A stretch of 64,000 nt of DNA, from IMG/VR virus record IMGVR_UViG_3300037264_008423, positions 124,001 to 188,000 of that record; one strand, 5' to 3'. Both the position numbers and the translations under genes were made by a program. Positions within the stretch are counted from its first letter, which is position 1. Each line of letters starts with the position of its first letter. This document shows positions 18,625 through 62,284 of the stretch, in pieces. The notes below the pieces were generated by a model that saw nothing but the letters and a program-made list of their open reading frames with translations, did not search any database and was not told the origin of the DNA.

Positions 18625-18770
18625 AGGACATAGAACGGGATCGACGTTTAGTTTTTTTGTCCGTGTAAGCGGTCTGGCAGGGAATTGCGTGAACCTCCGG
18701 GCCGAGGACGCCGCAGCGTTCGCAGGCTTCCCAGGTCATCTCCAACATGAGGCTTTTCAGGTCTTCCGAA

Positions 18771-19055
18771 TCACATGCCAGGCTGGAAATCGTCTCGCTT
18801 CTGGCGGGGTTCCCAGGTGCGCCGCTCGATGGCGTCCCACACTCTTTTACAGGCGGGGAAGGCCATGCCGAGGGCGCGCCAGAGGGTTCTCCAGAAGGAG
18901 TAATCCTCGACGAAGATCCGCTCGCCGGTGAAGGTCCAGTAAGAACGGAAGCCCGACACCGCCCGAACGCGCCGGGGGCGAGCACTGTGACTTTCCCAAA
19001 ACCAGCAGGCGCTCCAGCATAAGAGGCGATTCTTTGAGGCATGGCGATTTTTCAT
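18771..19055 (-). CDS. Hypothetical Trp-rich protein
   Basis: 94-aa ORF in operon. Confidence 0.5.
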   Translation of the reverse strand: MKNRHASKNRLLCWSACWFWESHSARPRRVRAVSGFRSYWTFTGERIFVEDYSFWRTLWRALGMAFPACKRVWDAIERRTWEPRQKRDDFQPGM

Positions 19056-19069
19056 GGTTCGGTGCGCCG

Positions 19070-19411
19070 TTATCGGTCCTTTGATCGGAGCACTTTGAGT
19101 TCCTCTTCTGTAAATTCCCGATTGCCAAAATTTTTAATGACGGGAAAGACCCACTTAGCGAAATTGCCTACGGGCCGCTGTTTGGCTTTTTGCTCGGCGG
19201 CGCGCTTCTCAAGGGCAGCGTCTTCACGCTGGTTGAGGCTGCTTTCCTGGTCCTCGGTAAGCGAGGGGCAGCGAGGATCGTGCTCACAGGGAAAAGTGGA
19301 AAAGTGGCCGCAACGCTGGTTATAGTCCATCGCTTCCACCAGCCGGGTAAAACATTGTTCGTCCCCAAGACCGGCTTTAGAGACCAGGCAGTGTGATATA
19401 GGTATGCTCAT
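19070..19411 (-). CDS. Hypothetical protein
   Basis: 113-aa ORF downstream of the palindrome. Confidence 0.65.
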   Translation of the reverse strand: MSIPISHCLVSKAGLGDEQCFTRLVEAMDYNQRCGHFSTFPCEHDPRCPSLTEDQESSLNQREDAALEKRAAEQKAKQRPVGNFAKWVFPVIKNFGNREFTEEELKVLRSKDR

Positions 19412-19423
19412 GTCTCAGCAATA

Positions 19424-19455
19424 TCCACTTGAAATTGTAAACAATTTCAAGTGGA
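19424..19455. promoter_or_regulatory. Perfect 15-bp inverted repeat, putative operator or terminator
   Basis: TCCACTTGAAATTGT-AA-ACAATTTCAAGTGGA, 12 nt upstream of ATG 19411. Confidence 0.6.
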
Positions 19456-19489
19456 AAAACAATTCCACCCAGGAGACAGAACGGCTCTT

Positions 19490-20101
19490 TTAAAGGGCGA
19501 TGTTTTCGAGGTCGGCCAGCTTAATAGGACCGGCTGCGGTTACTTCCGCTGCCGGTTCCGAAAGGCTCTCCGCATCCGGGTAAAAATGAATGGAACTGCG
19601 GCTGCCGTGTTCCATCGTGTAGCCTAAGCCGCGCGCGGTCAGGTCTAACTCGTCAAGCAGCTTGGAGTTTTCTTCCAGGTGATCGGCCAGCAGTCCGCTC
19701 AGGGTCATGGAGAACGCGGCGTTTTGCGCGTATTCCGGGTAGGGTCCCCGATAAGCTCCCTGGGGCCACACCTTGAACTCGCCGGACAGCCCCTTGTTAT
19801 TCATGAACTCGGTAATGCTTTGGACCGCTTGGTCGGGCTGAAGCGAGCCGGTGTAGTCCTTGGGGTCCAGATCATCGATTTCCGCTTCTCCGATGTCCTG
19901 AAGCAACTTGTGAAGCTGGTAGAGCTGACCCGCGCGCTGGCGCGAAACATTGAGCTGCCTGCCGATGGTCCGGTAGGGCAGCTTGAGTTTGTCGCGCATG
20001 CGCGCGACGTAGGCGGCGCGCTCCCGCCGCACCGGATTGTCCGCTTCCGTCAGCAGGTCCACGACCGCGCTGATTAACCAGTTGTTATGCTCGTCCGCCA
20101 T
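19490..20101 (-). CDS. HTH-containing protein with acidic-KD tag
   Basis: Sigma-region-4-like YRTIGRQLNVSRQRAGQL; VVDLLTEAD and IGEAEIDDLDPKDY; GTAGTTA 6 nt upstream. Confidence 0.75.
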   Translation of the reverse strand: MADEHNNWLISAVVDLLTEADNPVRRERAAYVARMRDKLKLPYRTIGRQLNVSRQRAGQLYQLHKLLQDIGEAEIDDLDPKDYTGSLQPDQAVQSITEFMNNKGLSGEFKVWPQGAYRGPYPEYAQNAAFSMTLSGLLADHLEENSKLLDELDLTARGLGYTMEHGSRSSIHFYPDAESLSEPAAEVTAAGPIKLADLENIAL

Positions 20102-20110
20102 CAAGGCTAA

Positions 20111-20524
20111 CTACTCCACCCAGGGCACCTTGGCCGTGGCCAGCCGATGGGCATCGTCATTTTTAACGGTGCCAGCCGAATCTTCGGTAAGAACCTGGAG
20201 CTGGCCTTCGGCAAATCCCAGGCGCACGCCTGGGGGACAGTTGCGCGCCAGGCGCTTCAAGGCGCTGATCCAAAGGCGCACGGGCGGCGGCGGCGGGTCT
20301 TGGAGCCGATACTTGAGCTGGACCTTGGCGCTTTCCAGGAAGTCCCGGCCTCGCGCGCTAAGCTGAAATCGCTCCACTTGGTCGGGCGCGGCCAGCGCGC
20401 CCTGATGGTCCACCGGCTGGATAAAGGCCCGGTAGCGCATCATTTTGAGATAGTTGGCGCTCGTGGGCTGAAGGCGGCCATCGGCAACCGTTTGCAGCAA
20501 AGAGACAGGCGGGGTTCGGGTCAT
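20111..20524 (-). CDS. Hypothetical protein
   Basis: 137 aa, ATGA-coupled. Confidence 0.65.
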   Translation of the reverse strand: MTRTPPVSLLQTVADGRLQPTSANYLKMMRYRAFIQPVDHQGALAAPDQVERFQLSARGRDFLESAKVQLKYRLQDPPPPPVRLWISALKRLARNCPPGVRLGFAEGQLQVLTEDSAGTVKNDDAHRLATAKVPWVE

Positions 20525-20712
20525 GGCCGTAAAGCGCGCCGGGGGCTGACCACGGGCAGATGGGCAGGCAGGGGCGGTTGGGGACGGAGCACCGTTCCCG
20601 GTTCCTGGTTGCAGACCGGGCAGCGCAGGACACCTTGTGTAAGCTGCAACCGACCACGGCAGAAAGCGCAGGGGTCTCCCGCTTTTGCATTATTTTTGTT
20701 TACTTTAGACAT
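20521..20712 (-). CDS. Small zinc-ribbon protein
   Basis: CAFC...CPVC. Confidence 0.6.
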   Translation of the reverse strand: MSKVNKNNAKAGDPCAFCRGRLQLTQGVLRCPVCNQEPGTVLRPQPPLPAHLPVVSPRRALRP

Positions 20713-20781
20713 AACGACAAGGCCGTAAGGGTGCATAAAGCCAAGACCCAGCCGAGGACGCTGGCCTGCAAGTGACCGGGG

Positions 20782-21213
20782 TTAGCCTGGGCGCACCAGG
20801 ATTTCAGGGTTAAAAGCAGCGGGTCCGTGTGGCGGGGGCGGCGCGACGGGAAGCAGCGGAGCATGAGCCACAGGGGCAGCAGGACCAGCATCCTTAAACA
20901 CTGTTTGTTCAGAGATTCGCCAGCGGATATAGGCGCGGTCCTGGCTAAGCCGGGCAAACGGCTTTCGGCTGAGGTCATTGCGCAGTCGCCGCAAAAATTT
21001 GGCGTGCCCCGCCTCAGTGTCGAAGCAAAAGGCCGCGCCTTTATCCAAAGACTGGACCAATTCGGTGTAGGTGAGGCGCACCGCCTGGTGCTGAAGGCTA
21101 CAGACGACTTGCGCGTCACTCTGTTTCTCGAATATTCGGGCAGCATGATCTTTACCTTCCAACAGGTAGCCGTTGTTGCTGTTAACTACAAGCCAACCTA
21201 GATTATCACTCAT
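20782..21213 (-). CDS. Hypothetical protein
   Basis: Start MSDNLGW via TAATG overlap. Confidence 0.7.
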   Translation of the reverse strand: MSDNLGWLVVNSNNGYLLEGKDHAARIFEKQSDAQVVCSLQHQAVRLTYTELVQSLDKGAAFCFDTEAGHAKFLRRLRNDLSRKPFARLSQDRAYIRWRISEQTVFKDAGPAAPVAHAPLLPVAPPPPHGPAAFNPEILVRPG

Positions 21214-23036: not shown

Positions 23037-23039
23037 AGC

Positions 23040-23723: not shown

Positions 23724-23729
23724 AGCGAA

Positions 23730-23757
23730 AATGTAAACAAAATAAACTCCGCGTCAA
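23730..23757 (-). promoter_or_regulatory. Sigma70-like promoter (leaderless)
   Basis: TTGACG-N16-TACATT, 6 nt before ATG 23723. Confidence 0.7.
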
Positions 23758-23790
23758 GCCCAAATGCTAACTATTTCGTGGTTTAGCGGG

Positions 23791-33139: not shown

Positions 33140-33252
33140 GCCTTTAACTGTCGTAACTACAATCTGCCCCGCCCTGCCATCGGCGCTCGGTTTTGTAAAC
33201 AATTAGCGGCTTGCTTTGTGCCTACAAGCATATGGATGCTGTTTTGGATTTA

Positions 33253-33290: not shown

Positions 33291-33860
33291 ATGCAAGCCA
33301 CTAAGCTGACGTTTGTGAAATCGCTCGGTGTCAACAACTATCATCAAAGGGTGTCCCTTTGGCGTTGTGAGTGTGGGCGAGAAAAAGCGATTATCCACAG
33401 CCGGGCGGTTAGAGGTGCGACTAAGAGCTGCGGCTGTCTTCAGCGCGAAGCTCTGGCCAAAACAGTTGCGATTTATCGCAGGAAACCTTACGGCGAATCC
33501 TGTTTCAATAGTCTGTTTGGACTTTACCGGGCAGGAGCTAAAAGGCGCGGCTTCTGCTTTGATCTTACTCCGAATGAGTTTGCGAAACTTGTAGCGCAAC
33601 CGTGCTTTTACTGCGGGTGCCAGCCCAGTTCCAAACACCGTAGAAGTAGCTGCTACGGAGAATTTGTTTACAGCGGCATTGACAGAGTGAAAAACACGGT
33701 CGGTTATACCTTGGAAAATTGCGTTCCGTGCTGCCAGATTTGCAACAATGCGAAACGGACTCTCAGCTTGGTAGAATTTGTAGAATGGATTACGCGGATA
33801 CACAGGCACATTAATAGGTCCGGCGTCTTGGAAAAATTAAAGCATCTGACCACCACCTAG
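33291..33860 (+). mobile_element. Free-standing HNH homing endonuclease
   Basis: WRCECG...TKSCGC N-terminus; CFYCG; GIDRVKNTVGYTLENCVPCCQICNNAK; AT-richer, antisense to its neighbours. Confidence 0.85.
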
Positions 33861-35463: not shown

Positions 35464-35514
35464 AGGCAGACAGAACGGGTTTTTCGTAAGCAATTTTAAT
35501 CTGGTATGTAGTTT

Positions 35515-35939: not shown

Positions 35940-36137
35940 ATGAAGCTTAAATATCCTTTACGGGTTGGATCGAGCCTGCTGGCGGCTGGCACGGAATTGC
36001 GCCCGGCCTCGCTGGAGGAAACACAAAAAGTCTGGCCTGGGATCAGCTATCAACCGGGGAGCAAGCAAGTGGCGGCTTGGCTTCCCCTGGAAACAGACCA
36101 TCCCATTATTTTGCACCGGATACAGGTTGACTTATGA
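35940..36137 (+). CDS. Small hypothetical protein
   Basis: 65 aa, ATGA-coupled to the baseplate gene. Confidence 0.6.
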   Translation: MKLKYPLRVGSSLLAAGTELRPASLEETQKVWPGISYQPGSKQVAAWLPLETDHPIILHRIQVDL

Positions 36138-38461: not shown

Positions 38462-38482
38462 GTTTTCGGTTCTTGGGTGCGT

Positions 38483-44415: not shown

Positions 44416-44416
44416 A

Positions 44417-46415: not shown

Positions 46416-46491
46416 AGTATCATCTTTTCCCAAAAGAACGGGCTGGACGGGGGTCCTTTTTGGAAAAAGTAAAAAATATGCATTTTGCCTA

Positions 46492-46520
46492 TTGACGGCT
46501 AACTATAAATTGTTTACCTT
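46492..46520 (+). promoter_or_regulatory. Sigma70-like promoter
   Basis: TTGACG-N17-TACCTT, 9 nt before ATG 46530. Confidence 0.7.
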
Positions 46521-46529
46521 TTCTACCTA

Positions 46530-47441: not shown

Positions 47442-47560
47442 TCACACCCGAAGACAACCCGGTGAACGAGAAAATGCTGCGCCGCCATGCGCGGCAAGTG
47501 CAGACCAAACTCAAAAGGATGTTTGGCACAGATGAAAGCGGCGAACCGCGCGCCGCTTAA
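47438..47560 (+). CDS. 40-aa hypothetical peptide
   Basis: MITPEDNPVNEKMLRRHARQVQTKLKRMFGTDESGEPRAA; ATGA-coupled; not in the track. Confidence 0.45.
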   Translation: MITPEDNPVNEKMLRRHARQVQTKLKRMFGTDESGEPRAA

Positions 47561-50004
47561 TCCTCGATCCGGTCCAAGGGGGGGCGCTGGCGACGGCGGC
47601 GCAGGCGGTGTCCTGGCCGCTCGCCGCCTTGGTCTTCCTCTGGCCGCCATTCCAGCTTCTCCAGAATGCTCATGGTCATGCTGCGCGGTTCCACGTTGCC
47701 CCGGAAGTGCTGATAGGCGGTCCCATGCCGATTCAGAAATACGAAGTAACGGATGATGTTTTGGGCATACTCGTCGTCCGTGGCGCACAGGCCAATGGCC
47801 ACGTCCACAATTCCCGCCTTCTCAAACGATCCCTGGAAGCTCTTCATGCTGGGCACCGCCAGGTCCACCGTTTCCTTGTTGCACCGGTCGGGCAGGATGA
47901 CCGGGCAGCCAAATTCGGAACCCAGGGCGCGCGCTTCCAGATAAATCTCACCCTGGGCGCGCCACTCGCTGGTCCGCTTGGGATCGGAACTGGGCTTTAC
48001 GGTTTCGGCGAAGTCGATGATGATGGCCTTGGGTTTGACGCCGAAGCGCGCGCTGGCAGTCAGCGCATGGGAGCGGATGTCGCCGCTAATCGTGGCCGCG
48101 CGCGAGGGAAAGCCTTTGATCAGCAGGGTGGAATTAAGCCTTTCGTTGGCCATTTGCAAGGCTTTTTCCGTAAACGTTTTCTTGTTCTGGTAGATCATGT
48201 CAAACGGCAGATCGGTCAGATTGCAGAGACAGCGCACGGCGGCAAGCTCCTGGCTGATCTCGCAGGGATAGTAGAACACGGGGGAGCCGGTGTTCTCGAT
48301 CATGTTCATGGCCAGGTTGATGCAGAAGGCGGTGTTATGGGTGACCGTGAAGTCGCTGTGCAGGTAGCGGCGATTTCCGTCGATTTCTATGCCAAACCAC
48401 TCTTGGTTGCCTACTGGCGCTACTTTTATCGTTGTTCTGTCCGAGGCTTTTTTAGAATCGGTTCCGTGCTTCCTGGCAACCTTGGTTGGAATTTCGCTGA
48501 TTCGGCCCTGAACATAAGTTCTATAGGCGATTGAGAATATCTTTTTTCCTTTTACGATGCATTGGCTGCGAAACGGGCGTATGAAGCTTTTAAAGCCTAA
48601 ACTTCTAGCAAGCCAGCAAGTATCTTCGCATAGCAGTCGGTTTGTGTCTGTAAAAATGAATCCACGGTTATTGGCGTGGCTACCGTCACTGTCAATTAGT
48701 CCGGCCAACAGTCGCAGGCGTGTGGCTTGGCTATTTATTTTGTAAACAAATGGGATATGCTTGTTGCGCAGGAGATTTAAAGCGCGCAGTCCGTTTATGA
48801 TCGGATTTTGGCCTTTGCCCTGTCCAACGAGAGACACCTGCGTGCAGCGCGTTTTCTTTCTATAGGTGGTTACGCGTAACCCTGCCTTAGTGGCAAAGTC
48901 GTGTAGAAAAGGCGTAATTTCCGGGTCATCGTCCCCTACGCTTATAGAAGCTTCATGCGAACTGCCATCCCCAAGCCAAAGACCAAGAAAATAAGGATCT
49001 AACGGCACGCTCACTGCGGGGAAGTCAACTCTGACTTTGTAACCTTTCCAATCTCGGTGGAAGTTTGCTGATTTTTTCGCATAGTCTTCAGCCGTAATCT
49101 CCAGAATTTCACCCAAGTGATACCTGTCTGTAAACCTTCCAACCGGCACCGTGCCCGGTGGTCTTTTCACACAGAGAATGTGGTCGTGGGTGACCGTATA
49201 GCTGTCGCCGTTTGCTTGGGTGACCCGATACATAGGGGCGCAGCCCCGGCCACAACTAAGCACGTTGCGGGGTGTTCCGTCGTCTCCCATGATTTTATCT
49301 CCGGGAGCAAGCTGGCAAATTTGTTTAATGGTGCCGTCAAACATTAGTATCTGCGTGTCAGGGCTTTCACATTTATATCTTTTAGGCGGAGCTAAAATTG
49401 CAATGAGCCAGCCGGGACCCCAGCCAAAGGGCCAGATGCGGTCCAGATCTCCAAAGCCAGTCTGGATGCCGTAGTCGCGCTTGGTCACGGTGTCCAGGAC
49501 CAGTTGGATGTCGCTCTCCCCGGATTTGATGCGGTAGCCAATGTCTTTGAGGTTCTGCCCCACTTTGAGCGCGTCCTCGAACAGTTTGGTAAACCCACCA
49601 GGGGGAGCCTCACCGGTTTTGTGGTAATTGATGGCTTTGTCGCAGGCGATGTAGAGGGCGCGCTCCCGCGCGAACTCCACGGTCTTTTCCACCGCGTAAT
49701 CCACGTCCGACGTGTCCAGCGTGGTGATCTTGCGCACAAAGGCCATGATGTTGCCTTCCTCCTTGGCGTCGGAGGACCGCAAGATGGCGTCGTAAACAAT
49801 TTGGCTGAGGGCTTCAGGCTGAGGGAAACGTCCGTTTTTATTCCAGTAGGCGAAGAGCGCGCGCGCTGTGGCCACACGCGGCACGCTGGTAAAATAGGCG
49901 GAGTTCAACGTTCCCGCGTTGTGCATGAACCTTTCCGGGTGCGCGATAATCGACGCCAGGAGCAGGTCTTGGAACGAACCGTCGTATGAGTATTTTTCAA
50001 ACAT
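47557..50004 (-). CDS. Replicative DnaB/gp41-like helicase, intein-containing
   Basis: TGFGDLD, APPKRYK/T P-loop, IKGFP, IIIDFAE, SFEKAGIVD, NRHG. Confidence 0.85.
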   Translation of the reverse strand: MFEKYSYDGSFQDLLLASIIAHPERFMHNAGTLNSAYFTSVPRVATARALFAYWNKNGRFPQPEALSQIVYDAILRSSDAKEEGNIMAFVRKITTLDTSDVDYAVEKTVEFARERALYIACDKAINYHKTGEAPPGGFTKLFEDALKVGQNLKDIGYRIKSGESDIQLVLDTVTKRDYGIQTGFGDLDRIWPFGWGPGWLIAILAPPKRYKCESPDTQILMFDGTIKQICQLAPGDKIMGDDGTPRNVLSCGRGCAPMYRVTQANGDSYTVTHDHILCVKRPPGTVPVGRFTDRYHLGEILEITAEDYAKKSANFHRDWKGYKVRVDFPAVSVPLDPYFLGLWLGDGSSHEASISVGDDDPEITPFLHDFATKAGLRVTTYRKKTRCTQVSLVGQGKGQNPIINGLRALNLLRNKHIPFVYKINSQATRLRLLAGLIDSDGSHANNRGFIFTDTNRLLCEDTCWLARSLGFKSFIRPFRSQCIVKGKKIFSIAYRTYVQGRISEIPTKVARKHGTDSKKASDRTTIKVAPVGNQEWFGIEIDGNRRYLHSDFTVTHNTAFCINLAMNMIENTGSPVFYYPCEISQELAAVRCLCNLTDLPFDMIYQNKKTFTEKALQMANERLNSTLLIKGFPSRAATISGDIRSHALTASARFGVKPKAIIIDFAETVKPSSDPKRTSEWRAQGEIYLEARALGSEFGCPVILPDRCNKETVDLAVPSMKSFQGSFEKAGIVDVAIGLCATDDEYAQNIIRYFVFLNRHGTAYQHFRGNVEPRSMTMSILEKLEWRPEEDQGGERPGHRLRRRRQRPPLDRIED
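48334..49371 (-). mobile_element. Intein (346 aa) with LAGLIDADG homing endonuclease
   Basis: Begins CESPDTQILMFDG, block B TVTHDH, LGLWLGDG and LLAGLIDSDG, ends VTHN followed by Thr; AT-richer than the extein. Confidence 0.95.
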
Positions 50005-50026
50005 AGCCAGGCCACACAGAACGAAA

Positions 50027-51055
50027 TCAACCAGGTCGATGGTCGTAGAGGGATGGATAGCCTTGGACCAGGTTCAGGCACTCGTAGTGCTGAATAGCGG
50101 CGGCCAGCCAGATCCAGACCTTAACGGGATCGGTAAACGTGGTTGCGCTGTCGGCCAGGAAGTCGTCCGTTTGAAACCCGCGCAGGGCCAGGACGCGCGT
50201 AACGGCTTCCGGGAAAACTCTCTGGCGCATGTGGAACAGGGCTACCGCCTGCGTGGGGTGGGTTTTAAGCTTGCCCAGGATGTGCGCCACTTGCCAGCGA
50301 TGCCGCCGAAAAACTTCGGGGACCTCTTTTTGTTTTCGCTCCAAGTGCGCGGACAGCACATCGTGGAAGTAGGAAGGCTCCAGCGCCAGCCAGCAGGGGT
50401 GCAGTTGAAGCTCCCTGGATTGGTAAAGCTGCCCGGTGATCTGGCCCGACCGGAACAGCTTATAGCCGATAATCCAGGAGCCTGCGGTGATTTCAGAGCT
50501 AAGGAGCAAGCTTTCAAAATCCTGCTTGGCGATCTCTGTTCCCATCATCCGGTCAAGGCTGCGGATGTCAAACGTTCCGTATTGACGCTGACAGGCCGCC
50601 GCGAAGACTTTGACCTGGCGCACGGCATGCTCCGTGGTCAAGACTCTGGCGTGGAAATTTTCATCGGGCCGGGACTGCGCCCAGCCGGTCATGTTGGCCA
50701 GGATAAACAGTTTAACAGAAGTGCCACTCTGGCGCGCCCTGGCCAGGACCAGATCGCGCTGGCGGCCCACCCGACCGGGCGCTCGGTGCTCGAAGACCCA
50801 TTCGTGGCATAGCGCGTAAACATGTTCCAGGTCCGCCGCGTCGGGGTCCAGGCTGTAAACATCTCCGTGCTCGTAGCGATGCAGGGTATAGGGCACAAAG
50901 TTAAACTCGGCCCGGTGGAGGGGCACGCGCCGCGCCAAGTGGCCCATGAGTTCCGCGCAGGCGGCGCGATGGGGGCATACGGGACAGGCGGGGTTATCCC
51001 GGTTTTGTTCCAGCCCGAAGCAGGGCAGCGGCGGATCGTAGGCTTGTCTTTCCAC
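50027..51055 (-). CDS. Hypothetical replication-region protein with N-terminal Cys cluster
   Basis: GTG start 8 nt after GTTCT; PCFG...CPVCPHRAAC. Confidence 0.75.
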   Translation of the reverse strand: MERQAYDPPLPCFGLEQNRDNPACPVCPHRAACAELMGHLARRVPLHRAEFNFVPYTLHRYEHGDVYSLDPDAADLEHVYALCHEWVFEHRAPGRVGRQRDLVLARARQSGTSVKLFILANMTGWAQSRPDENFHARVLTTEHAVRQVKVFAAACQRQYGTFDIRSLDRMMGTEIAKQDFESLLLSSEITAGSWIIGYKLFRSGQITGQLYQSRELQLHPCWLALEPSYFHDVLSAHLERKQKEVPEVFRRHRWQVAHILGKLKTHPTQAVALFHMRQRVFPEAVTRVLALRGFQTDDFLADSATTFTDPVKVWIWLAAAIQHYECLNLVQGYPSLYDHRPG

Positions 51056-51086
51056 AGCCTTAAAGAACGATTTGGTTCTAGCCCTC

Positions 51087-54000
51087 ATGCCAGAAAATGA
51101 GCAAGTCGATGCGGAGACCAAAAAACCACGGGCACCCCTGCGGGTTTTTCGCACCCACGCGGGTGAGCCGGTCAGCTACACGGGGGTCAAAAAGTTTTTT
51201 AAGGACATCATCACCTACCACAACGGCTCCCGGATGGAGGGCAAGCGCGAGCTGGTGGAGCTGGCGGACCCCAACCTGCCGTTAGGCGACCGTCCGCTGA
51301 TACCCGGCAGGCACAGCCCGGTGTGCGCCGCGTGCGGCCTGGACCAGATGGGAGCCAAGCGGCCCTACCTGGAATATGCGGGGCCAGACCGACCGGTGGT
51401 CACGATCCTGGTGGAATGCGTGTCTAAAAGGGACGATGATCGGGGACAGATCGGGGTGGGCAACCCTATCGCCTACCTGTCCAGCCTCATCTACCGGCTG
51501 GAATCGGTCCATAAGGTAAGCCTGGGCGAGATCCGCTGGGTTCCCATCACACGGTGCGCCTACCGGGAGGGAAAACCTCCCAACTACAAAACGAAAGGCA
51601 ATTGGTGCCGTTACCACGCCATCCAAGACCTGATCCTCCATCCGCCCAAAGTGGTCATTCCCGTGGGCACGGACGTGCTGGGCCTTCTATCCCACAAAAG
51701 CAACGCCCAAGACTGGAGCGGACGGCTTTTAACCTGGCGGGGCTGGCCTGATGACTGGCTCACGGAACCGGACTACATACTGGACCGGACCGATCCCGCG
51801 CACAAGGAAGGCACGGTGCGCGGACACCCTATCTTTGGACCGGCCCCCCAGGTAAGGATACCAATGGTGCCACTGCAAAGTCAGCGAATCGTGCTGGCCG
51901 CGCAGAACGAAGTGGTCACCCGGCGCTGGGTGGACCATTTGATTTACGCGCTTAAGGTGGGAAAAATGGAAATCCCGCCTCCCGACTATATCCGGCCCTG
52001 GTATCACCTTAGCCTCGATCCGCAGGAGATTATCCAAATCTTGCAGACGGTGATTCAGTATGCTAATGCGCACCCGCCCTTTCGCGTGGCTTACGACACC
52101 GAAACTACCGGGTTGAAGGCATGGGCTTACTATAAGCGCGTGAGCGCCGATGAGGTCACCCGCTCCGCTGATCCCCGCATTGTGTTCATGATGTTCCGCT
52201 GGGTTAACCCGGAAACACAGCAGCCGGAATCGCTGGGCTTTCCCTGGGACTACCCGGAGAGCGAGCTGAAGCCGTTTTTACAGGCCATCACACCCTACGT
52301 GGTCGAACTGCTGGCCACGGCCAGCATCGTGGGCCACAACTTGACCTTCGATGAATTGTTCACCATCGCGACGGTGGGCACCGAGCCAGCCGAGCACGAG
52401 CCTTTTACGCCGGACGGCGCGCTCAATCCATCCTGGCTGTGGCTGCAAGACCGAATTAACCTGCTCGCAAGCGCGATGGGCTGGGATACCTGGCACATGG
52501 CTTTCACCGTTCAGAAGCGACGCGGGAGCTTGGGTCTGGAAGTCATTACTTATGGCTACGCCCCTGATTTGGCCGGTTACGAGGAGGACATGACCCTGCT
52601 GATTGATCTGCATGGCGATCTGATGAACCCCGCCAATAATAAGGGAGGCCACTACGCCAATTGTCCCAAGCCTCTGTGGGAGACTCACTTAAAACCCTAC
52701 GTGATGGGCGACGTGGAAGCGACCTATCGGGCCAGGGACGCGCTGGCCGTGGAACTGAGCCAGACCCAAGGCTACCGTATCCCGATGGCCAAGCCAGGGG
52801 TTCCCGGACGCTTCCGCTACTACACCTGTCCCAACCGGGAGTGGGTTTACCAAAATATCATGGTCCCCGCCTCGCGAACGCTCACCAAAATAATGGCCAG
52901 GGGTATGCACATCGACGCCGAGGAACTGATCACCCAGGAACAGGTTTACCCCGAACGCGTGGAAGCCGCCAAGCGCGAATTGCGCGACGTGGACCCGGCC
53001 ATTAGCGCCTGGTGCCAGACCAAACTGAGCGAATCCCAGCAGGTGAAAGAGGGCCAGTCCTCCGAGGATCGGGTGCTGTGGGAACTGGATCTGGAAAATA
53101 AAAGTCAGTTGAAGGAGCTGCTGTTCCAGGTCTTAAAGTGTCCCATCCAACGCATGACAAAGAGCGGACGTAAAATTTATGGCGATGAACTCGCTGGCTG
53201 GGAACACCTGGAATGCGCGATCAAGCTCGAATACGCGGCAGTGGACAAATACACCCTGAACCGGCTAGCCGTGGATCACCCCAACCTGCGTCCGCTCCAG
53301 CAATATCGTAAAGAGTTCAAGCTCTATTCCACCTATGTGCGGCCTTTGCGCAACATGATGGCCGAGCGCCTGGACAAAAAGCAGCGGGTCAAGGAGCCAC
53401 ACCTGTCCGTGGACCACTGCATTCATGCTCAATTTATGCTGACCGGGACACGGGGAGGGCGTCTGTCCTGCCGCGACCCCAACCTGCAACAGCTTCCGAA
53501 TGACGGCAAGGTGAAGCGCCTTTTTAGTTCCCGATTTGGCTCTCGTGGCTGTATCTATGCCGCCGATCTCAGCCAGATCGAGCTGCGCCTTATGGCGGCG
53601 GCCTGTGGTGACGCGTCAATGGTTGGCGCGTATTTGAACGATGTTGATCTTCACTCCTTGACCGCCAGCAAAATCGCCTGGAGCGACGGTAAGATCTCCT
53701 ACGAGGAGTTCACGAAGAAGCACATGGAGAAGCTCCAGCACGAGGGCCACGCGGACCAGGCCAAGGATTTGGAACTGAAGCGTAAGATCGCAAAAACCGT
53801 AAACTTTTTAACGGGTTACGGCGGCGGTGCTTTTGGTTTACAAAATGTTCTTGCGAACAACCAGGTTTACATTACGCTGGAAGAGTGCGAGCACATTATC
53901 GACTCGTTCTTTGAAGCTTATCCCGCGCTTCAGCGTTTCCTGGGGGTTTACAAGGATTTCATCTTAACCAACGCGTGCGCCGTGTCGCTCTTTGGCCGGG

Positions 54001-54419
54001 TGCGCTTTTTCGAGGAAGTCCGGGGCGAAGACCAGGAGGCGACCAGCAAGGCGCTTCGCGCTGGCTGCAACCACCTGATTCAAAGCACGGCCAGCGACAT
54101 GATGCTGCTGTGCCTGATCACTATCGAGGCGCTCATGCGCGATGCCGGATTAAATTCCCTGCTGGTTTCCACGGTCCACGACAGCTTGGTTGTGGATGCG
54201 CTGCGCGAAGAGTTGCCGCAGATCCATGACATCGCGTATGGGGTGATGAACGACATCCCCACGGTCATTCAGTCCATGCTGCCTGGCTACGATACGTCCT
54301 GGATGATTGTGCCGCTGGCCGGGGATAGCGAAGTGGGCTTGAACTACCTGGAAACCAATAAAATATCCGGGTCCAACCCGGACTGGGAGGCTCTGCTGCA
54401 ACCCTGGAAGAAGGGATAG
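51087..54419 (+). CDS. polA: Family A DNA polymerase with N-terminal uracil-DNA-glycosylase-like domain and 3'-5' exonuclease
   Basis: CAACGL...TRC...WC...PKVVIPVG UDG-like; YDTETTGL, GHNLTFD exonuclease; GRLS..PNLQQ, DLSQIELR, AKTVNF..GYG, TVHDS. Confidence 0.95.
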   Translation: MPENEQVDAETKKPRAPLRVFRTHAGEPVSYTGVKKFFKDIITYHNGSRMEGKRELVELADPNLPLGDRPLIPGRHSPVCAACGLDQMGAKRPYLEYAGPDRPVVTILVECVSKRDDDRGQIGVGNPIAYLSSLIYRLESVHKVSLGEIRWVPITRCAYREGKPPNYKTKGNWCRYHAIQDLILHPPKVVIPVGTDVLGLLSHKSNAQDWSGRLLTWRGWPDDWLTEPDYILDRTDPAHKEGTVRGHPIFGPAPQVRIPMVPLQSQRIVLAAQNEVVTRRWVDHLIYALKVGKMEIPPPDYIRPWYHLSLDPQEIIQILQTVIQYANAHPPFRVAYDTETTGLKAWAYYKRVSADEVTRSADPRIVFMMFRWVNPETQQPESLGFPWDYPESELKPFLQAITPYVVELLATASIVGHNLTFDELFTIATVGTEPAEHEPFTPDGALNPSWLWLQDRINLLASAMGWDTWHMAFTVQKRRGSLGLEVITYGYAPDLAGYEEDMTLLIDLHGDLMNPANNKGGHYANCPKPLWETHLKPYVMGDVEATYRARDALAVELSQTQGYRIPMAKPGVPGRFRYYTCPNREWVYQNIMVPASRTLTKIMARGMHIDAEELITQEQVYPERVEAAKRELRDVDPAISAWCQTKLSESQQVKEGQSSEDRVLWELDLENKSQLKELLFQVLKCPIQRMTKSGRKIYGDELAGWEHLECAIKLEYAAVDKYTLNRLAVDHPNLRPLQQYRKEFKLYSTYVRPLRNMMAERLDKKQRVKEPHLSVDHCIHAQFMLTGTRGGRLSCRDPNLQQLPNDGKVKRLFSSRFGSRGCIYAADLSQIELRLMAAACGDASMVGAYLNDVDLHSLTASKIAWSDGKISYEEFTKKHMEKLQHEGHADQAKDLELKRKIAKTVNFLTGYGGGAFGLQNVLANNQVYITLEECEHIIDSFFEAYPALQRFLGVYKDFILTNACAVSLFGRVRFFEEVRGEDQEATSKALRAGCNHLIQSTASDMMLLCLITIEALMRDAGLNSLLVSTVHDSLVVDALREELPQIHDIAYGVMNDIPTVIQSMLPGYDTSWMIVPLAGDSEVGLNYLETNKISGSNPDWEALLQPWKKG

Positions 54420-59198: not shown

Positions 59199-59208
59199 CT
59201 GCTTGTCA

Positions 59209-59621: not shown

Positions 59622-59696
59622 AAACCGTATTTAGAGAAAGAAAATTATGCCGACGCGCCAAGCCGAATCACAGAAGATCGCAGCCGCCGCGCGCAC

Positions 59697-59770
59697 GCGG
59701 GTATGGTCTAACAGCAGAACGAGGCGGTGCCAGCGCTTAGGTGGGGGTGCGATTCCCCCTACCCGCTCCA
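59697..59770 (+). tRNA. tRNA-Gly(GCC)
   Basis: GCGGGTA/TACCCGC acceptor, U73, CCA; anticodon loop GTGCCAG; T-loop TGCGATT. Confidence 0.9.
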
Positions 59771-59779
59771 AATTTAGAA

Positions 59780-59850
59780 TGCTACCGGTCTCAACGGTGA
59801 CGTGATTCAGACCACTGAGTCATCCGAGTTCTATCCTCGGCGGCTGCACC
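59780..59850 (+). pseudogene. tRNA-like element or degenerate tRNA
   Basis: T-arm CCGAG-TTCTATC-CTCGG, stem TGATTCAG/CTGAGTCA, imperfect acceptor stem. Confidence 0.35.
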
Positions 59851-59852
59851 GT

Positions 59853-59928
59853 GGGGGCGCATGTTCCGTAGCGGCGAGATTGCCTTGCAAGCAAACTGGG
59901 TCGGGTGCGACTCCCGTCACCTCCACCA
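59853..59928 (+). tRNA. tRNA-Ala(TGC)
   Basis: G3-U70, A73, CCA; loop CTTGCAA; T-loop TGCGACT; atypical D arm. Confidence 0.8.
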
Positions 59929-59934
59929 AATCTT

Positions 59935-59963
59935 TTGACAGATTTTTTTGCGCGCGGTAAGGT
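59935..59963 (+). promoter_or_regulatory. Sigma70-like promoter (leaderless)
   Basis: TTGACA-N17-TAAGGT, 5 nt before ATG 59969. Confidence 0.75.
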
Positions 59964-59968
59964 CAAGT

Positions 59969-60157
59969 ATGAAACGTAAACACTTTCTATATGGCCTGCT
60001 CGCAGGCGCGGCGTCCACTTTAATGCTGGTCTTGTTCCTAGGCGCGGCAGATCCCACTTGGCTGGACATCGCAAGCAGCCTGAAGCGGATCGCCCATTCC
60101 CTGGAGATGATCTCCGGCCAGCGGCCCGGTTGGAAAATTCCATACGCGGGTAAATGA
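59969..60157 (+). CDS. Small exported/membrane protein inside the tRNA array
   Basis: MKRKHFLYGLLAGAASTLMLVLFLGAA signal-like N-terminus. Confidence 0.7.
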   Translation: MKRKHFLYGLLAGAASTLMLVLFLGAADPTWLDIASSLKRIAHSLEMISGQRPGWKIPYAGK

Positions 60158-60162
60158 CCTTC

Positions 60163-60236
60163 GGGGCCATAGCTCAATAGCAGAGCGGGTCGTTCGCAAC
60201 GACTAGATCGGGGTGCGACTCCCCGTGGTTCCACCA
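60163..60236 (+). tRNA. tRNA-Ala(CGC)
   Basis: GGGGCCA/TGGTTCC, G3-U70, loop TTCGCAA, CCA. Confidence 0.9.
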
Positions 60237-60241
60237 GATTT

Positions 60242-60316
60242 CGGCTGCGTAGCTCAATAGCAGAGCGTGCGCGTCACATGCACAAGGAACCCGTGCGATT
60301 CGGGCGTGGCCGACCA
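60242..60316 (+). tRNA. tRNA-Val(CAC), apparent 8/4 fold
   Basis: CGGCTGCG/CGTGGCCG acceptor, CCCG/CGGG T-stem, loop GTCACAT, A73, CCA. Confidence 0.75.
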
Positions 60317-60332
60317 TTTTGTTCTAAAGCTT

Positions 60333-60776
60333 GTGATCAATAGTAAACAAATCAAAGCTGAATTAGCCGTCATAAAGGTGCAGGAAGCGGCACTTAAAAT
60401 GGGCCGGATATGCAGCAAACCTGTCATTGAAGGGACGCGCTACGATTTGATAGTTGATGACGGTAAGCGTCTTATGCGCGTTCAAGTCAAATACTGTGGT
60501 GGTTATTACGATGGCGTTGTTGCGGTTAAACTTAAAAGTTATGGTAGGCAGGGGGCAGACCGTAGCTATTGCGCCAGTGAAATCGACGCCGTTATAGCCT
60601 ATTCTGATGTGAATGACCGGCTTTATTGTCTGCCGATTACTATGCTAGCGGACAAAACAACCATCCGCTTGCGCCATGCTCGTCCTAGAAACAATCAAAA
60701 GCAGCGGATTTGGCAGGCAGAAGACTTTATATGGGGCTGTAGCTCAAATAGGCAGAGCAGCACGATGGCATCGTGA
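60333..60776 (+). CDS. PD-(D/E)XK homing-type endonuclease (group I intron-associated family)
   Basis: KAELAV, RYDLIVD, RVQVK, Y..SEID; GTG start 7 nt after GTTCT; 3' end overlaps tRNA-Ala(GGC). Confidence 0.85.
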   Translation: MINSKQIKAELAVIKVQEAALKMGRICSKPVIEGTRYDLIVDDGKRLMRVQVKYCGGYYDGVVAVKLKSYGRQGADRSYCASEIDAVIAYSDVNDRLYCLPITMLADKTTIRLRHARPRNNQKQRIWQAEDFIWGCSSNRQSSTMAS

Positions 60777-60809
60777 AGGTTGAGGGTGCGATTCCCTTCG
60801 GTTCCACCA
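60733..60809 (+). tRNA. tRNA-Ala(GGC)
   Basis: GGGGCTG/CGGTTCC, loop ATGGCAT, T-loop TGCGATT, ACCA. Confidence 0.85.
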
Positions 60810-60815
60810 ATTTTT

Positions 60816-61031
60816 GCCAATAAGCTGGGCGGTTGATCGAGACTTCCGTCTGGCCGAACGCGGTTACGATCAGCCGGGGGAACCGGTAAAACCTACGGCT
60901 GTTGGGAGCGAGGCTTGCCGAGCAGCAGGCCGCTTTGGCAGTATTTCACGGCACCCAACGTGGGACGGCGGCAGGCCGGTCGTGCGGTCTGTAAACGCGA
61001 CTCCGCCCGTCAGCGTAAAACAGGTGCCGTG
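60816..61031 (+). ncRNA. Structured ncRNA candidate (two multi-stem domains)
   Basis: CGGTTGATCG/CGATCAGCCG, GGCTTGC/GCAGGCC, CACGGCACC/GGTGCCGTG, CAGGCCG/CGGTCTG; lies between tRNAs. Confidence 0.55.
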
Positions 61032-61034
61032 TTT

Positions 61035-61110
61035 ACGGCAGTAGCTCAATTAGCAGAGCGGCGGTCTCCAAAACCGTTGGTTGGGGGTGCGAGTCCTCCC
61101 TGCCGTGCCA
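61035..61110 (+). tRNA. tRNA-Trp(CCA)
   Basis: ACGGCAG/CTGCCGT, loop CTCCAAA, G73, CCA. Confidence 0.92.
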
Positions 61111-61113
61111 TTT

Positions 61114-61353
61114 TTAGCGCGCGGGTTTTACTTTGCGCCGGGCGCGCGCCTTGCTTTTAGCAATGGGCGCTTGTTGGACATAACTCGGACACTTCGGGTT
61201 TTCGCAGTGACCGCCTTTTTTCACCAACCAGCCGCAAGCGCATTGGCTGAAGCAGTCACATTTTAAGAATCCCTGGGTGCCGCACGTGGGACAGACCACC
61301 GTGGCATCGATCAGGCGCTCAATGGCGCTCAAAGGTTTAGTTTGCATCGGCAT
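61114..61353 (-). CDS. Small Cys-rich protein antisense to the tRNA array
   Basis: CPTC..CDC..CACG..CENPKC. Confidence 0.6.
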   Translation of the reverse strand: MPMQTKPLSAIERLIDATVVCPTCGTQGFLKCDCFSQCACGWLVKKGGHCENPKCPSYVQQAPIAKSKARARRKVKPAR

Positions 61354-61378
61354 ACACTAAGTCATAGAATCAATTTTA

Positions 61379-61463
61379 CCCACAGTCCAGAAAGAGTGGA
61401 GGAAGGTCCCTACGCGCCACAGCGGAAGTAACGGGGCCAGGACCACAGTGGTTTGGACTGGGG
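61379..61463 (+). ncRNA. Rod-like hairpin RNA candidate
   Basis: CAGTCCAGA/TTTGGACTG, GTGG/CCAC, GGTCCC/GGGGCC nested stems with purine-rich internal loops. Confidence 0.45.
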
Positions 61464-61468
61464 TGAAC

Positions 61469-61556
61469 GGGCGTGTGACCGGAGCAGCAATCGGCACGGG
61501 CTGTAAACCCGTCGGCCTAAAAACCTACGCAGGTGCGAGTCCTGCCACGCCCCCCA
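61469..61556 (+). tRNA. tRNA-Tyr(GTA)
   Basis: GGGCGTG/CACGCCC, loop CTGTAAA, long variable arm, unusual C73, CCA. Confidence 0.88.
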
Positions 61557-61561
61557 TTTTA

Positions 61562-61650
61562 AGCGCCGTAGCTCAGAGGCAGAGCAAACCCAAAGCCTGT
61601 AACCAGGTGAGCGGTGGGGATGAGAGGTTCGAGTCCAATCCGGCGCACCA
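61562..61650 (+). ncRNA. tRNA-like RNA with expanded anticodon arm
   Basis: GCGCCG/CGGCGC-ACCA, canonical D arm and GGTTCGAGTCC, but a 24-nt insert in place of the anticodon loop. Confidence 0.6.
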
Positions 61651-61679
61651 TTCTTCCGTCTGGCGGTGTAATTAAAGGC

Positions 61680-62102
61680 ATGAACAGCAAGATTATCGGG
61701 GATATTTCCGAAGCATCCGTAATTGCGGCTCTTTTAAAATCGGGTTTGAACGTGTTAATGCCTTTCGGTGACAGGAACAGGTATGATATCGTGATTGAAC
61801 ATGACGGAAAATTTGAACGTGTGCAGATAAAAACAGGTAGGCAGCGCGGGAGAGTTATAGTCTATAATACACAGAGTTCAACTCGCGTTAACGGCAAACG
61901 GTGTGAATTAGGCTACCAAGGCCAAGTTGAAACTTTTGCGGTTTATCACCGTGAGCTGGATCGGGTCTATATGGTTCCTGTCGGTAAAGCAGCTACCGGT
62001 AAAGGGAGTTTGCGCTTGGGGCCTAAAGGCGGTTCTGGTGTAGGACCAAGATGCCTTTACGCTGATGACTATATTTTAAGGAGCGTTAGCTCAGTCCAGT
62101 AG
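61680..62102 (+). CDS. PD-(D/E)XK homing-type endonuclease (group I intron-associated family)
   Basis: GDISEA, PFGDRNRYDIVIE, RVQIKTG; GTAATTA 5 nt upstream; 3' end overlaps tRNA-Asp. Confidence 0.88.
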   Translation: MNSKIIGDISEASVIAALLKSGLNVLMPFGDRNRYDIVIEHDGKFERVQIKTGRQRGRVIVYNTQSSTRVNGKRCELGYQGQVETFAVYHRELDRVYMVPVGKAATGKGSLRLGPKGGSGVGPRCLYADDYILRSVSSVQ

Positions 62103-62156
62103 AGCAATCGACTGTCTATCGAAAGGTCAGGGGAGCAAAGCCCCTACGCTCCGCCA
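62080..62156 (+). tRNA. tRNA-Asp(GTC)
   Basis: GGAGCGT/ACGCTCC, loop CTGTCTA, G73, CCA; aberrant T-loop AGCAAAG. Confidence 0.85.
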
Positions 62157-62159
62157 TTT

Positions 62160-62268
62160 TTGCTTCCACAGCGCCGCCCCTGAAAGCGGCGACTGTTACG
62201 ATCCAGACAGGACAGATCGAGCCGGTTAAATAGAGTCCTTCTTTAATTGGCGGACAGCATGGAAGCAA
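62160..62268 (+). ncRNA. Four-way-junction RNA candidate with loop-loop pairing
   Basis: TTGCTTCCA/TGGAAGCAA closes three hairpins; loops contain complementary AGGAC/GTCCT. Confidence 0.6.
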
Positions 62269-62284
62269 TTTGTTCTTACGCGGT

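What the first reader, a model, noticed from the sequence alone, without database searches (positions are those of the whole stretch)
18632..62276. GTTCT: second start-proximal motif marking DNA-metabolism genes (candidate middle promoter)
Seen 7-9 nt before the starts of the DinG helicase (35472-35476 -), NrdJ domain (38469-38473 +), 51055 gene (51064-51068 -), PolA (51075-51079 +), endonuclease (60321-60325 +), UDG (62272-62276 +) and micropeptide (18632-18636 -). It lies 13 nt before the DnaB-like helicase (50018-50022 -) and 19 nt before the FkbM operon (46435-46439 -). A 5-mer is common by chance, but the fixed spacing and functional coherence are not. It also corrects several start codons. 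With GTANTTA and the sigma70-like promoters it suggests a three-tier programme.
Basis: partly seen in the sequence, partly recalled or inferred. Interest (0 to 1): 0.65.

Follow-up and report, generated by a model that had tools for sequence, protein, structure and literature searches.

The report
Leaderless-type GTTCT promoter element in phage
A five-base motif, GTTCT, sits 7-8 bases before the start codons of about one gene in nine in this uncultured 238-kb phage and four relatives, and is most likely the core of a phage-specific promoter that starts the mRNA at the start codon itself.

Summary
All nine sites lie at the stated coordinates with the stated spacings.

- **Enrichment.** The window is part of a 238-kb IMG/VR myovirus. 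GTTCT is the most enriched 5-mer in the 25 nt before motif-independent gene starts (24 genes against 3.2 expected). It ranks 1-5 of 1024 in four related genomes whose PolA is 46-52% identical.
- **Spacing.** The distance to the start codon has a hard minimum: 7 nt (33), 8 nt (23), then a tail to about 12.
- **Leaderless clade.** There is no Shine-Dalgarno signal. Canonical sigma70-like promoters end their -10 hexamer 6-7 nt before ATG. GTTCTN has the same geometry.
- **Other support.** Position -1 is a pyrimidine in 44 of 47 sites. TTG starts are avoided. Divergent operon heads are enriched (OR 3). Back-to-back copies have variable spacing. Orthologues tend to keep the motif (OR 4.7).

Best reading: a -35-independent, -10-position promoter element for leaderless mRNAs of replication, repair, DNA-modification and homing-endonuclease genes. 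"Middle" timing is untested, there is no TSS evidence, and no sigma factor or RNA polymerase was found. It is a new variant of a kind known from Thermus phages.

The parts
35472..35476 (-). GTTCT, 8 nt before GTG 35463 of the DinG-like helicase gene (33811-35463). This gene heads a divergent unit.
   Evidence: Helicase_C_2, DEAD_2. Orthologues in G001 and G003 also carry GTTCT.
38469..38473 (+). GTTCT, 9 nt before ATG 38483 of a TSCPD-domain protein (38483-39229). It lies in the 21-nt gap after the upstream gene.
51064..51068 (-). GTTCT, 8 nt before GTG 51055 of a 342-aa protein with no family match (50027-51055). It stands back-to-back with the PolA copy (AGAAC-N6-GTTCT on the + strand).
   Evidence: The orthologue in G001 carries GTTCT.
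51075..51079 (+). GTTCT, 7 nt before ATG 51087 of family-A DNA polymerase (51087-54419), with C at -1.
   Evidence: GTTCT lies 8-16 nt upstream of the PolA start in relatives L002/L007, L004, L006 and L008.
60321..60325 (+). GTTCT, 7 nt before GTG 60333 of a PD-(D/E)XK endonuclease (60333-60776) inside the tRNA region.
62272..62276 (+). GTTCT, 8 nt before ATG 62285 of uracil-DNA glycosylase (62285-62899).
50018..50022 (-). GTTCT, 13 nt before ATG 50004 of a DnaB-like helicase that carries an intein (47557-50004). The spacing is in the tail of the distribution.
   Evidence: Orthologues in G001, G003 and G004 carry GTTCT at 9-11 nt.
46435..46439 (-). GTTCT, 19 nt before ATG 46415 of the FkbM-type methyltransferase (45792-46415). 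This is outside the main spacing range. An ATG 11 nt after the motif opens a 3-codon mini-ORF whose stop overlaps the real ATG. Doubtful member.
   Evidence: read directly from the sequence shown
18632..18636 (-). GTTCT, 7 nt before ATG 18624, which opens only a 22-codon ORF. The motif geometry fits but the gene is doubtful.

Best explanation
GTTCT (weakly extended as A/T-rich, then GTTCT, then a base that is rarely C or G) is the core of a compact promoter class that needs no -35 element. It occupies the -10 position.

The hexamer GTTCTN ends 6-7 nt before the A or G of the start codon. Transcription would therefore begin at or 1-5 nt before the start codon, giving leaderless or near-leaderless mRNAs.

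The reader of the motif is probably host RNA polymerase re-targeted by an unidentified phage factor, or an unrecognised phage polymerase. The canonical host sigma is unlikely, because the motif lacks the A(-11) and T(-7) of a sigma70 -10 box.

The motif drives a conserved set of genes for replication, repair and DNA modification, plus free-standing endonuclease genes. Two other start-proximal promoter classes exist in the same phages: sigma70-like, and GTANTTA.

**Shown:** position, enrichment, conservation, and geometry shared with bona fide -10 boxes in the same genomes.

**Inferred:** that it is read on DNA by a polymerase, where the transcript starts, and the timing.
For: 1. **Enrichment.** GTTCT is the top-ranked 5-mer upstream of motif-independent starts in G000, and ranks 1-5 of 1024 in four relatives with PolA 46-52% identical. 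A permutation control excludes a compositional cause.
2. **Spacing.** The spacer has a hard lower bound at 7 nt and a tail to about 12 nt (counts 33, 23, 11, 8, 6, 7; only 4 at 6 nt and none at 5 nt). This is expected if the start codon may lie at or after a fixed transcription start but never before it.
3. **Leaderless clade.**
   - No Shine-Dalgarno signal.
   - Canonical promoters (T-rich stretch, TTTACA/TTGACA, 16-18 nt, TAnnnT) end 6-7 nt before the start codon in 22 cases and 9-10 nt in 10 cases, against a background of 0-2 per position.
   - GTTCTN has the same distance.
4. **Start-site signature.** At 7-nt sites, position -1 is C or T in 44 of 47 (p 2e-7 against 60% in other genes) and +1 is A or G in 46 of 47. 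TTG starts are 2 of 138 against 116 of 1154 (p 2e-4).
5. **Divergent heads.** GTTCT genes head divergent transcription units in 53 of 138 cases against 197 of 1154 (OR 3.0, p 4e-8). In two G000 pairs, divergent start codons only 31-34 nt apart each have their own GTTCT.
6. **Not a palindromic operator.** Back-to-back copies are separated by 2, 3, 6 or 7 nt in different loci, while each keeps its distance to its own start codon.
7. **Conservation.** Orthologues at 22-52% identity share the motif state (OR 4.7, p 3e-9).
8. **Strand asymmetry.** Inside genes the antisense copy is more depleted (0.61 of expectation, rank 39 of 1024) than the sense copy (0.84, rank 305).
9. **Selfish genes carry it.** Free-standing ORFs that look like HNH homing endonucleases (from their N-terminal sequences only; not scanned against any family library) and a PD-(D/E)XK endonuclease (Pfam) have their own copy.
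10. **Precedent.**
   - Thermus phages YS40 and Lalka27a make leaderless transcripts that begin at the A or G of the initiator codon. Their late class has its own -10 element, TAGGGT (bioRxiv 10.64898/2026.04.20.719267).
   - The AR9 late promoter is AACA-N6-T-A/G(+1) (PMC5312081).
   - Promoter-like signals about 10 nt before start codons are an accepted sign of leaderless genes (PMC3160421).
Against: - No transcription start was mapped. The one RNA run that holds this phage gave only two short contigs inside genes.
- No sigma factor, T7-type polymerase, multisubunit polymerase domain or T4 gp55 relative was found.
- About 36% of sites (50 of 138) lie less than 40 nt behind a co-directional gene. 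There a promoter is not strictly needed.
- Spacers of 9-13 nt imply 2-6 nt leaders without any ribosome-binding motif.
- Three of the nine window sites use GTG, a poor leaderless start in some bacteria.
- None of the 23 tRNA genes has the motif close upstream.
- The antisense depletion is notable but not extreme.
- Gene calls come from my own ad hoc caller.
Confidence: 0.7

Rival explanations
1. GTTCT acts in the mRNA. It would be a Shine-Dalgarno-independent translation initiation signal, or the operator of a phage translational regulator (as T4 RegA binds initiation regions of replication-gene mRNAs).
For: - The 7-8 nt distance to the start codon resembles Shine-Dalgarno spacing.
- About a third of sites are operon-internal.
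- These phages lack any other ribosome-binding motif.
- The gene set overlaps the kind of genes RegA controls (T4 regA annotation).
Against: - GUUCU cannot pair with the universal CCUCC anti-SD tail (established knowledge; the host 16S is not available).
- Only about 11% of genes carry it, so it is not the general initiation signal.
- The spacing has a hard minimum with a one-sided tail, not a symmetric optimum.
- The Y(-1)/R(+1) rule and TTG avoidance fit a transcription start.
- It is enriched at divergent unit heads.
- The stronger depletion is on the antisense strand, which is not in the mRNA.
- Real -10 boxes in the same genomes give the same positional picture.
Confidence: 0.13
2. GTTCT is a half-site for a dimeric DNA-binding repressor or activator (a LexA- or Cheo-box-like GAAC/GTTC operator) that overlaps promoters defined by other sequences.
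For: - Inverted pairs AGAAC-Nx-GTTCT occur between divergent genes at window 51064-51079, at genome 209129-209145, and in L002 and L004.
- A wHTH protein gene carries the motif itself.
Against: - The half-site spacing is 2, 3, 6 or 7 nt, so there is no fixed operator geometry.
- Most of the roughly 140 sites are single copies.
- Each copy keeps a fixed distance and orientation to its own start codon.
- No other conserved promoter sequence accompanies it.
Confidence: 0.08
3. GTTCT marks an RNA processing site. An endoribonuclease would cut polycistronic RNA just before the start codon and create the leaderless ends.
For: - In G000 the motif often follows a T-run, and in the tRNA region it follows CCA-TTTT ends.
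- Some sites are operon-internal.
Against: - It is enriched at divergent heads, where no upstream co-transcript exists.
- There is no shared secondary structure or terminator upstream.
- The T-rich flank is weak once the relatives are pooled.
- Depletion is stronger on the antisense strand.
Confidence: 0.05

Closest known systems
Leaderless middle/late promoters of Thermus phages (phiYS40, Lalka27a; P23-45 has -35-less middle/late promoters)
   Same: - A class-specific -10-region element sits directly before the start codon.
- The transcript begins at the A or G of the initiator codon.
- The authors infer that host polymerase is re-targeted by a phage factor. The Lalka27a late class uses TAGGGT.
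- P23-45 middle/late promoters do without a -35 box.
   Different: - The consensus GTTCT has no TA dinucleotide and no resemblance to TAnnnT.
- The phages are uncultured 200-240 kb myoviruses from environmental metagenomes (the window's source is a sediment sample), with an unknown host.
- No transcript mapping exists.
Non-virion RNA polymerase promoters of jumbo phages (AR9 late AACA-N6-T-A/G; phiKZ late TATG)
   Same: - A very short conserved element.
- The same layout as the 7-nt class here: motif, six free bases, a pyrimidine, then a purine at +1.
- No -35 element.
   Different: - AR9 leaders are 26-491 nt, not leaderless.
- No split beta/beta' genes were detected here.
- The sequence differs.
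T4 late promoter TATAAATA, read by gp55 with gp33 and the clamp gp45
   Same: - A promoter with only a -10 element, read by host polymerase with a minimal phage sigma (own knowledge; T4 annotation).
- The tail sheath is distantly T4-like.
   Different: - Different sequence.
- T4 late mRNAs have leaders and Shine-Dalgarno sites (own knowledge).
- No gp55 relative was found with a single-sequence search.
Canonical sigma70 -10 hexamer of leaderless genes ('TA-led' genes)
   Same: The same distance to the start codon as the bona fide TAnnnT boxes in these genomes. This positional signal is the accepted mark of leaderless genes.
   Different: - GTTCTN lacks A(-11) and T(-7).
- No -35 box at 16-18 nt.
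Shine-Dalgarno sequence
   Same: Start-proximal, oriented, 7-8 nt spacer.
   Different: - No complementarity to the anti-SD.
- Present on only about 11% of genes.
- One-sided spacing distribution.

Membership tests
sigma70-type -10 promoter element | Hexamer ending about 6-7 nt before the transcription start (here the start codon of a leaderless gene) | tested here: met
   GTTCTN ends 6-7 nt before the start codon in 56 of 93 motif-independent cases. TAnnnT boxes paired with a -35 box in the same genomes end 6-7 nt before it.
sigma70-type -10 promoter element | Consensus TAnnnT (A at -11, T at -7) | tested here: not met
   The invariant core is G-T-T-C-T. The second position is T, not A, and the sixth is A/T/G without preference for T.
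sigma70-type -10 promoter element | -35 box 16-18 nt upstream, or a TGn extension | tested here: not met
   TTGAC-like words show no peak at any fixed distance from GTTCT. The logo is flat from -7 to -25 (to -60 in G000).
Leaderless phage promoter classes (Thermus-phage type) | Class-specific element directly upstream of an initiator codon that starts with A or G | tested here: met
   ATG 118, GTG 18, TTG 2. Spacing as. Three distinct start-proximal classes exist in the clade.
Leaderless phage promoter classes (Thermus-phage type) | Mapped primary 5' end at the first base of the start codon | not testable with these tools
   Only Logan contigs of one metatranscriptome were available. Two short contigs lie inside genes and no ends can be read.
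Jumbo-phage non-virion RNA polymerase promoters (AR9, phiKZ) | Phage-encoded split beta/beta'-like polymerase | tested here: not met
   No Rpb2_6 or Rpb1_2 match at E<=1 in six frames, with positive controls in 14 genomes. Large proteins have no PHROG or Pfam polymerase match. Very diverged polymerases could still escape.
T4-type late promoter | gp55-like sigma and TATAAATA consensus | tested here: not met
   T4 gp55 finds nothing in the genome at E<=10 (single sequence, no positive control). The consensus differs.
Shine-Dalgarno site | Complementarity to the CCUCC 3' tail of 16S rRNA | tested here: not met
   GUUCU has no pairing register with CCUCC (read from the sequence). No GGAG-type signal appears in the clade either. 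The host 16S itself is not available.
Palindromic operator (LexA/Cheo-box-like GAAC-N4-GTTC) | Two inverted half-sites at a fixed spacing | tested here: not met
   Inverted pairs occur with 2, 3, 6 and 7 nt between halves. Most sites are single.
ECF sigma promoter | Conserved -35 (GGAAC-like) 16-17 nt upstream of a CGTC-like -10 | tested here: not met
   No conserved upstream element. Sigma70_r2 finds nothing. The sigma70-ECF and Sigma70_r4_2 models find only sub-threshold HTH fragments, in proteins without orthologues in the relatives.

The most novel reading that the evidence does not exclude
GTTCT is read in the RNA, not the DNA. It would be a Shine-Dalgarno-independent signal through which a phage factor recruits or gates ribosomes on a chosen set of mRNAs, in a host that barely uses Shine-Dalgarno pairing. 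A less radical novel reading, which I hold at about 0.3, is that it is a promoter read by a new sigma-like factor or polymerase with no detectable homologue.
Probability: 0.1. Interest if true: 0.85.

Novelty: new variant of a known kind. Interest (0 to 1): 0.55.

Why it matters
- **Annotation.** It gives a simple rule for calling starts and transcription units in a clade of uncultured 200-240 kb phages that standard Shine-Dalgarno-based gene callers will mis-start.
- **Gene expression.** It shows a whole phage lineage built around leaderless expression, with at least three promoter classes.
- **An unidentified factor.** The phage must have some factor, with no detectable homologue, that redirects transcription to a -10-position element unlike TAnnnT. 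Finding it would add a new way of re-targeting RNA polymerase.
- **Synthetic biology.** The 12-nt promoter-plus-start unit could also be a compact expression part.

Tried and rejected
- **RNA evidence.** One metatranscriptome holds the phage, but only as two short contigs at window 46220-46398 and 47624-47889. No 5' ends can be read.
- **Sigma or polymerase hunt.**
  - Sigma70_r2, T7-type RNA_pol (whose control rang in no genome), Rpb2_6, Rpb1_2 and T4 gp55 found nothing. TIGR02937 and Sigma70_r4_2 gave only sub-threshold HTH hits.
  - Those hits lie in two proteins that have no orthologues in the relatives, so they cannot be the conserved factor.
  - PHROGs and Pfam on 21 large or early proteins showed no transcription protein.
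- **Candidate early factor.** A 227-aa protein (G000 69603-70286) conserved in four of the five relatives, with an early-type promoter in two of them, was folded (pLDDT 75). It has no PDB match at E<=0.001.
- **Terminator-promoter idea.** Hairpins upstream of GTTCT are no more frequent than at other genes.
- **tRNA promoters.** None of the 23 tRNA genes has GTTCT close upstream.
- **-35 partner.** None at a fixed distance.
- **Cultured relatives.** None closer than about 27% identity for PolA or about 30% for the tail sheath.
- **Chance or composition.** Rejected by the permutation control.


Full report
**What the window is.** The window is bases 124001-188000 of a 238,436-bp IMG/VR virus record, 96% complete, 57% G+C. 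It has a tail sheath and a portal, so it is a myovirus. No cultured phage comes closer than about 27% identity in PolA or about 30% in the sheath, and the sheath is distantly T4-like. It carries 23 tRNA genes. The DNA comes from a sediment metagenome.

**Checking the observation.** The 5-mer is not over-represented overall: 72 copies in the window against 92 expected. Only position can matter.

I wrote a gene caller that picks ORFs and starts from coding potential alone, without any upstream motif. With those starts:
- GTTCT is the most enriched of all 1024 5-mers in the 25 nt before starts across the whole genome (24 of 251 genes against 3.2 expected, p 4e-14).
- The extended motif is short: an A/T-rich stretch 3-5 nt upstream, then GTTCT, then a base that is never C in G000 and rarely C or G once relatives are pooled.

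**Independent replication.** A PolA search of IMG/VR found seven related loci at 42-52% identity. I fetched five of those genomes in full.
- In the four large ones, GTTCT again ranks 1st to 5th of 1024 upstream of starts (p 4e-7 to 2e-13).
- Pooled over the six genomes, the spacer to the start codon is 7 nt (33 cases), 8 (23), 9 (11), 10 (8), 11 (6) and 12 (7). There are only 4 cases at 6 nt and none at 5 nt, against a baseline near 2 per position.
- Of the 20 permutations of the same five letters, GTTCT has one of the lowest genome counts (third-lowest of 20). It still gives 93 start-linked cases, against at most 20 for any other.
- Upstream of PolA itself the motif is kept in L002/L007, L004, L006 and L008.
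- Across reciprocal-best orthologues at 22-52% identity, the motif state is concordant (OR 4.7, p 3e-9).

**What the surroundings say.** These phages show no Shine-Dalgarno signal at all. They do carry textbook sigma70-type promoters: a T-rich stretch, TTTACA or TTGACA, 16-18 nt, then TAnnnT. The -10 hexamer of these promoters ends 6-7 nt before the start codon in 22 cases and 9-10 nt in 10 cases, against 0-2 at any other distance. That is the arrangement of leaderless mRNAs: the transcript starts at the A or G of the start codon.

GTTCT plus one base is a hexamer that ends at exactly the same 6-7 nt. A second motif, GTANTTA, sits 4 nt before ATG or GTG with the same kind of hard lower bound. 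In G000 it precedes several very large genes without family matches.

**Promoter or translation signal?** Several independent features favour a DNA-level promoter.
- **Transcription-start signature.** At 7-nt sites, position -1 is a pyrimidine in 44 of 47 (p 2e-7 against 60% in other genes) and +1 is a purine in 46 of 47. This is the usual preference at transcription starts.
- **Start codon choice.** TTG starts are almost absent (2 of 138 against 116 of 1154, p 2e-4). In the GTANTTA class, GTG is as common as ATG. That makes sense if the first base only has to be a purine.
- **Unit heads.** GTTCT genes head divergent units three times more often than other genes (53 of 138 against 197 of 1154, p 4e-8).
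- **Tight divergent pairs.** At window 51055/51087 and genome 209118/209153, divergent start codons lie only 31-34 nt apart, and each has its own GTTCT.
- **Variable pair spacing.** Back-to-back copies are 2, 3, 6 or 7 nt apart in different loci, while each keeps its distance to its own start. This rules out a fixed palindromic operator.
- **Strand asymmetry.** Inside genes, the antisense copy is depleted to 0.61 of a codon-shuffle expectation (rank 39 of 1024). The sense copy is at 0.84 (rank 305).
- **Selfish genes.** Free-standing ORFs that look like HNH endonucleases, and a PD-(D/E)XK endonuclease, bring their own copy, as selfish genes usually bring a promoter. The HNH reading rests on their N-terminal sequences only; I did not scan those ORFs against a family library.
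- **No -35 partner.** There is none at a fixed distance, and no shared hairpin upstream.
- **No anti-SD pairing.** GUUCU cannot pair with the CCUCC tail of 16S rRNA.
- **Coverage.** Only about 11% of genes have the motif, so it is not the general ribosome-binding signal.

**Which genes carry it.** In G000 the class holds:
- a DinG-like helicase, a TSCPD-domain protein, a DnaB-like helicase with an intein, PolA, uracil-DNA glycosylase and a PD-(D/E)XK nuclease;
- a calcineurin-like phosphoesterase, a Dam-type methyltransferase and three other methyltransferases (four with the doubtful FkbM site), a glycosyltransferase and a wHTH protein;
- several free-standing endonuclease genes;
- but also a Cpn10-like protein, an Ig-domain protein and an 896-aa protein with a weak (below-cut-off) carbohydrate-binding-module match.

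Fourteen of the 27 genes lie between 160 and 212 kb. 'Middle' timing fits such functions but was not tested.

**What reads the motif.** This is unknown.
- No sigma region 2, T7-type polymerase, beta/beta' domain or T4 gp55 relative was found.
- Two sub-threshold region-4-like helix-turn-helix hits lie in proteins with no orthologues in the relatives.
- Large proteins and early-promoter proteins gave no transcription-related family.
- A conserved 227-aa protein, which has an early-type promoter in two relatives, folds with fair confidence but matches nothing in the PDB.

**Comparison with what is known.**
- The closest precedent is the Thermus phages. In YS40 and Lalka27a most transcripts are leaderless and begin at the A or G of the initiator codon. 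The Lalka27a late class has its own -10 element, TAGGGT, which the authors take as a sign of a phage factor changing polymerase specificity.
- The 7-nt layout (motif, six free bases, pyrimidine, purine at +1) also mirrors the AR9 late promoter AACA-N6-T-A/G. AR9, however, has long leaders and its own polymerase.
- Promoter-like signals about 10 nt before start codons are an accepted mark of leaderless genes.
- GTTCT fails the sequence definition of a sigma70 -10 box. It also fails the tests for a T4 late promoter, an ECF promoter, a LexA-type box and a Shine-Dalgarno site (see the membership table).

**Limits.**
- There is no mapped 5' end. The one metatranscriptome that holds the phage yields two short contigs inside genes.
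- Gene calls are my own. The count of 138 sites uses motif-assisted start choice; the motif-independent count is 93. The permutation control suggests roughly 10-30% chance assignments.
- About a third of sites are operon-internal, and spacers of 9-13 nt would leave 2-6 nt leaders whose translation is unexplained.
- The FkbM site (19 nt) and the 22-codon 'micropeptide' are doubtful members.

**Verdict.** The promoter reading is the best explanation (about 0.7). An RNA-level translation signal is the main rival (about 0.13). It is a new variant of a known kind, of moderate interest.

Noticed in passing
window 46492-46529 (before ATG 46530); window 23724-23765 (before the gene starting at 23723, - strand); many loci in G001-G004, e.g. 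L009-L020: Canonical sigma70-like promoters (T-rich stretch, TTGACG or TTTACA, 16-18 nt, TAnnnT) end 6-10 nt before start codons. The whole clade therefore appears to express early genes as leaderless mRNAs. No Shine-Dalgarno signal is seen anywhere.
   Followed up: yes
window 33140-33160 (- strand, before ATG 33139) and about 20 other G000 genes; pooled over six genomes: A second motif, GTANTTA (mostly GTAGTTA), lies exactly 4 nt before ATG or GTG in 37 cases, with a tail to 8 nt. In the AGTTA-defined class, GTG and ATG are used about equally. In G000 the motif precedes several very large proteins (1102, 1145 and 1982 aa) that have no family match.
   Followed up: partly
whole genomes G000-G005, coding regions: Every 5-mer containing GTAC is strongly avoided (0.36-0.56 of a codon-shuffle expectation, among the most depleted of 1024). 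This suggests avoidance of a GTAC-cutting restriction enzyme in the host.
   Followed up: no
window 47557-50004 (-): The DnaB-like helicase is interrupted by an intein (Hint domain plus a LAGLIDADG homing endonuclease). Another Hint-bearing protein lies at G000 100463-101389.
   Followed up: no
window 36134-38458 (+): The 775-aa protein upstream of the TSCPD-domain gene gave no ribonucleotide reductase match in Pfam, only a weak Baseplate_J hit (E 2e-5). Its identity as NrdJ is not confirmed.
   Followed up: no
window 59697-61556 and G000 188249-212177: 23 tRNA genes, all on the + strand. Many encode the CCA end and are followed by TTTT(A) before the next tRNA or gene. Several CCA-TTTT ends have no tRNA called upstream.
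   Followed up: partly
window 46413-46423 (-): Between GTTCT and the FkbM start there is a 3-codon mini-ORF (ATG ATA CTA TGA). Its stop overlaps the real ATG.
   Followed up: no
G000 41760 (-), 50616 (+), 203664 (+), 121294 (+): Free-standing ORFs of 149-204 aa lie in gaps my caller left empty, and each has GTTCT 7-9 nt before its ATG. Two share an N-terminal sequence typical of HNH/AP2-type homing endonucleases (judged by eye, not scanned).
   Followed up: partly
window 46220-46398 and 47624-47889: Two short contigs, with no mismatches to the window, occur in a sediment metatranscriptome from a different study than the DNA source. The phage, or a near-identical one, is present there, possibly as RNA.
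   Followed up: partly
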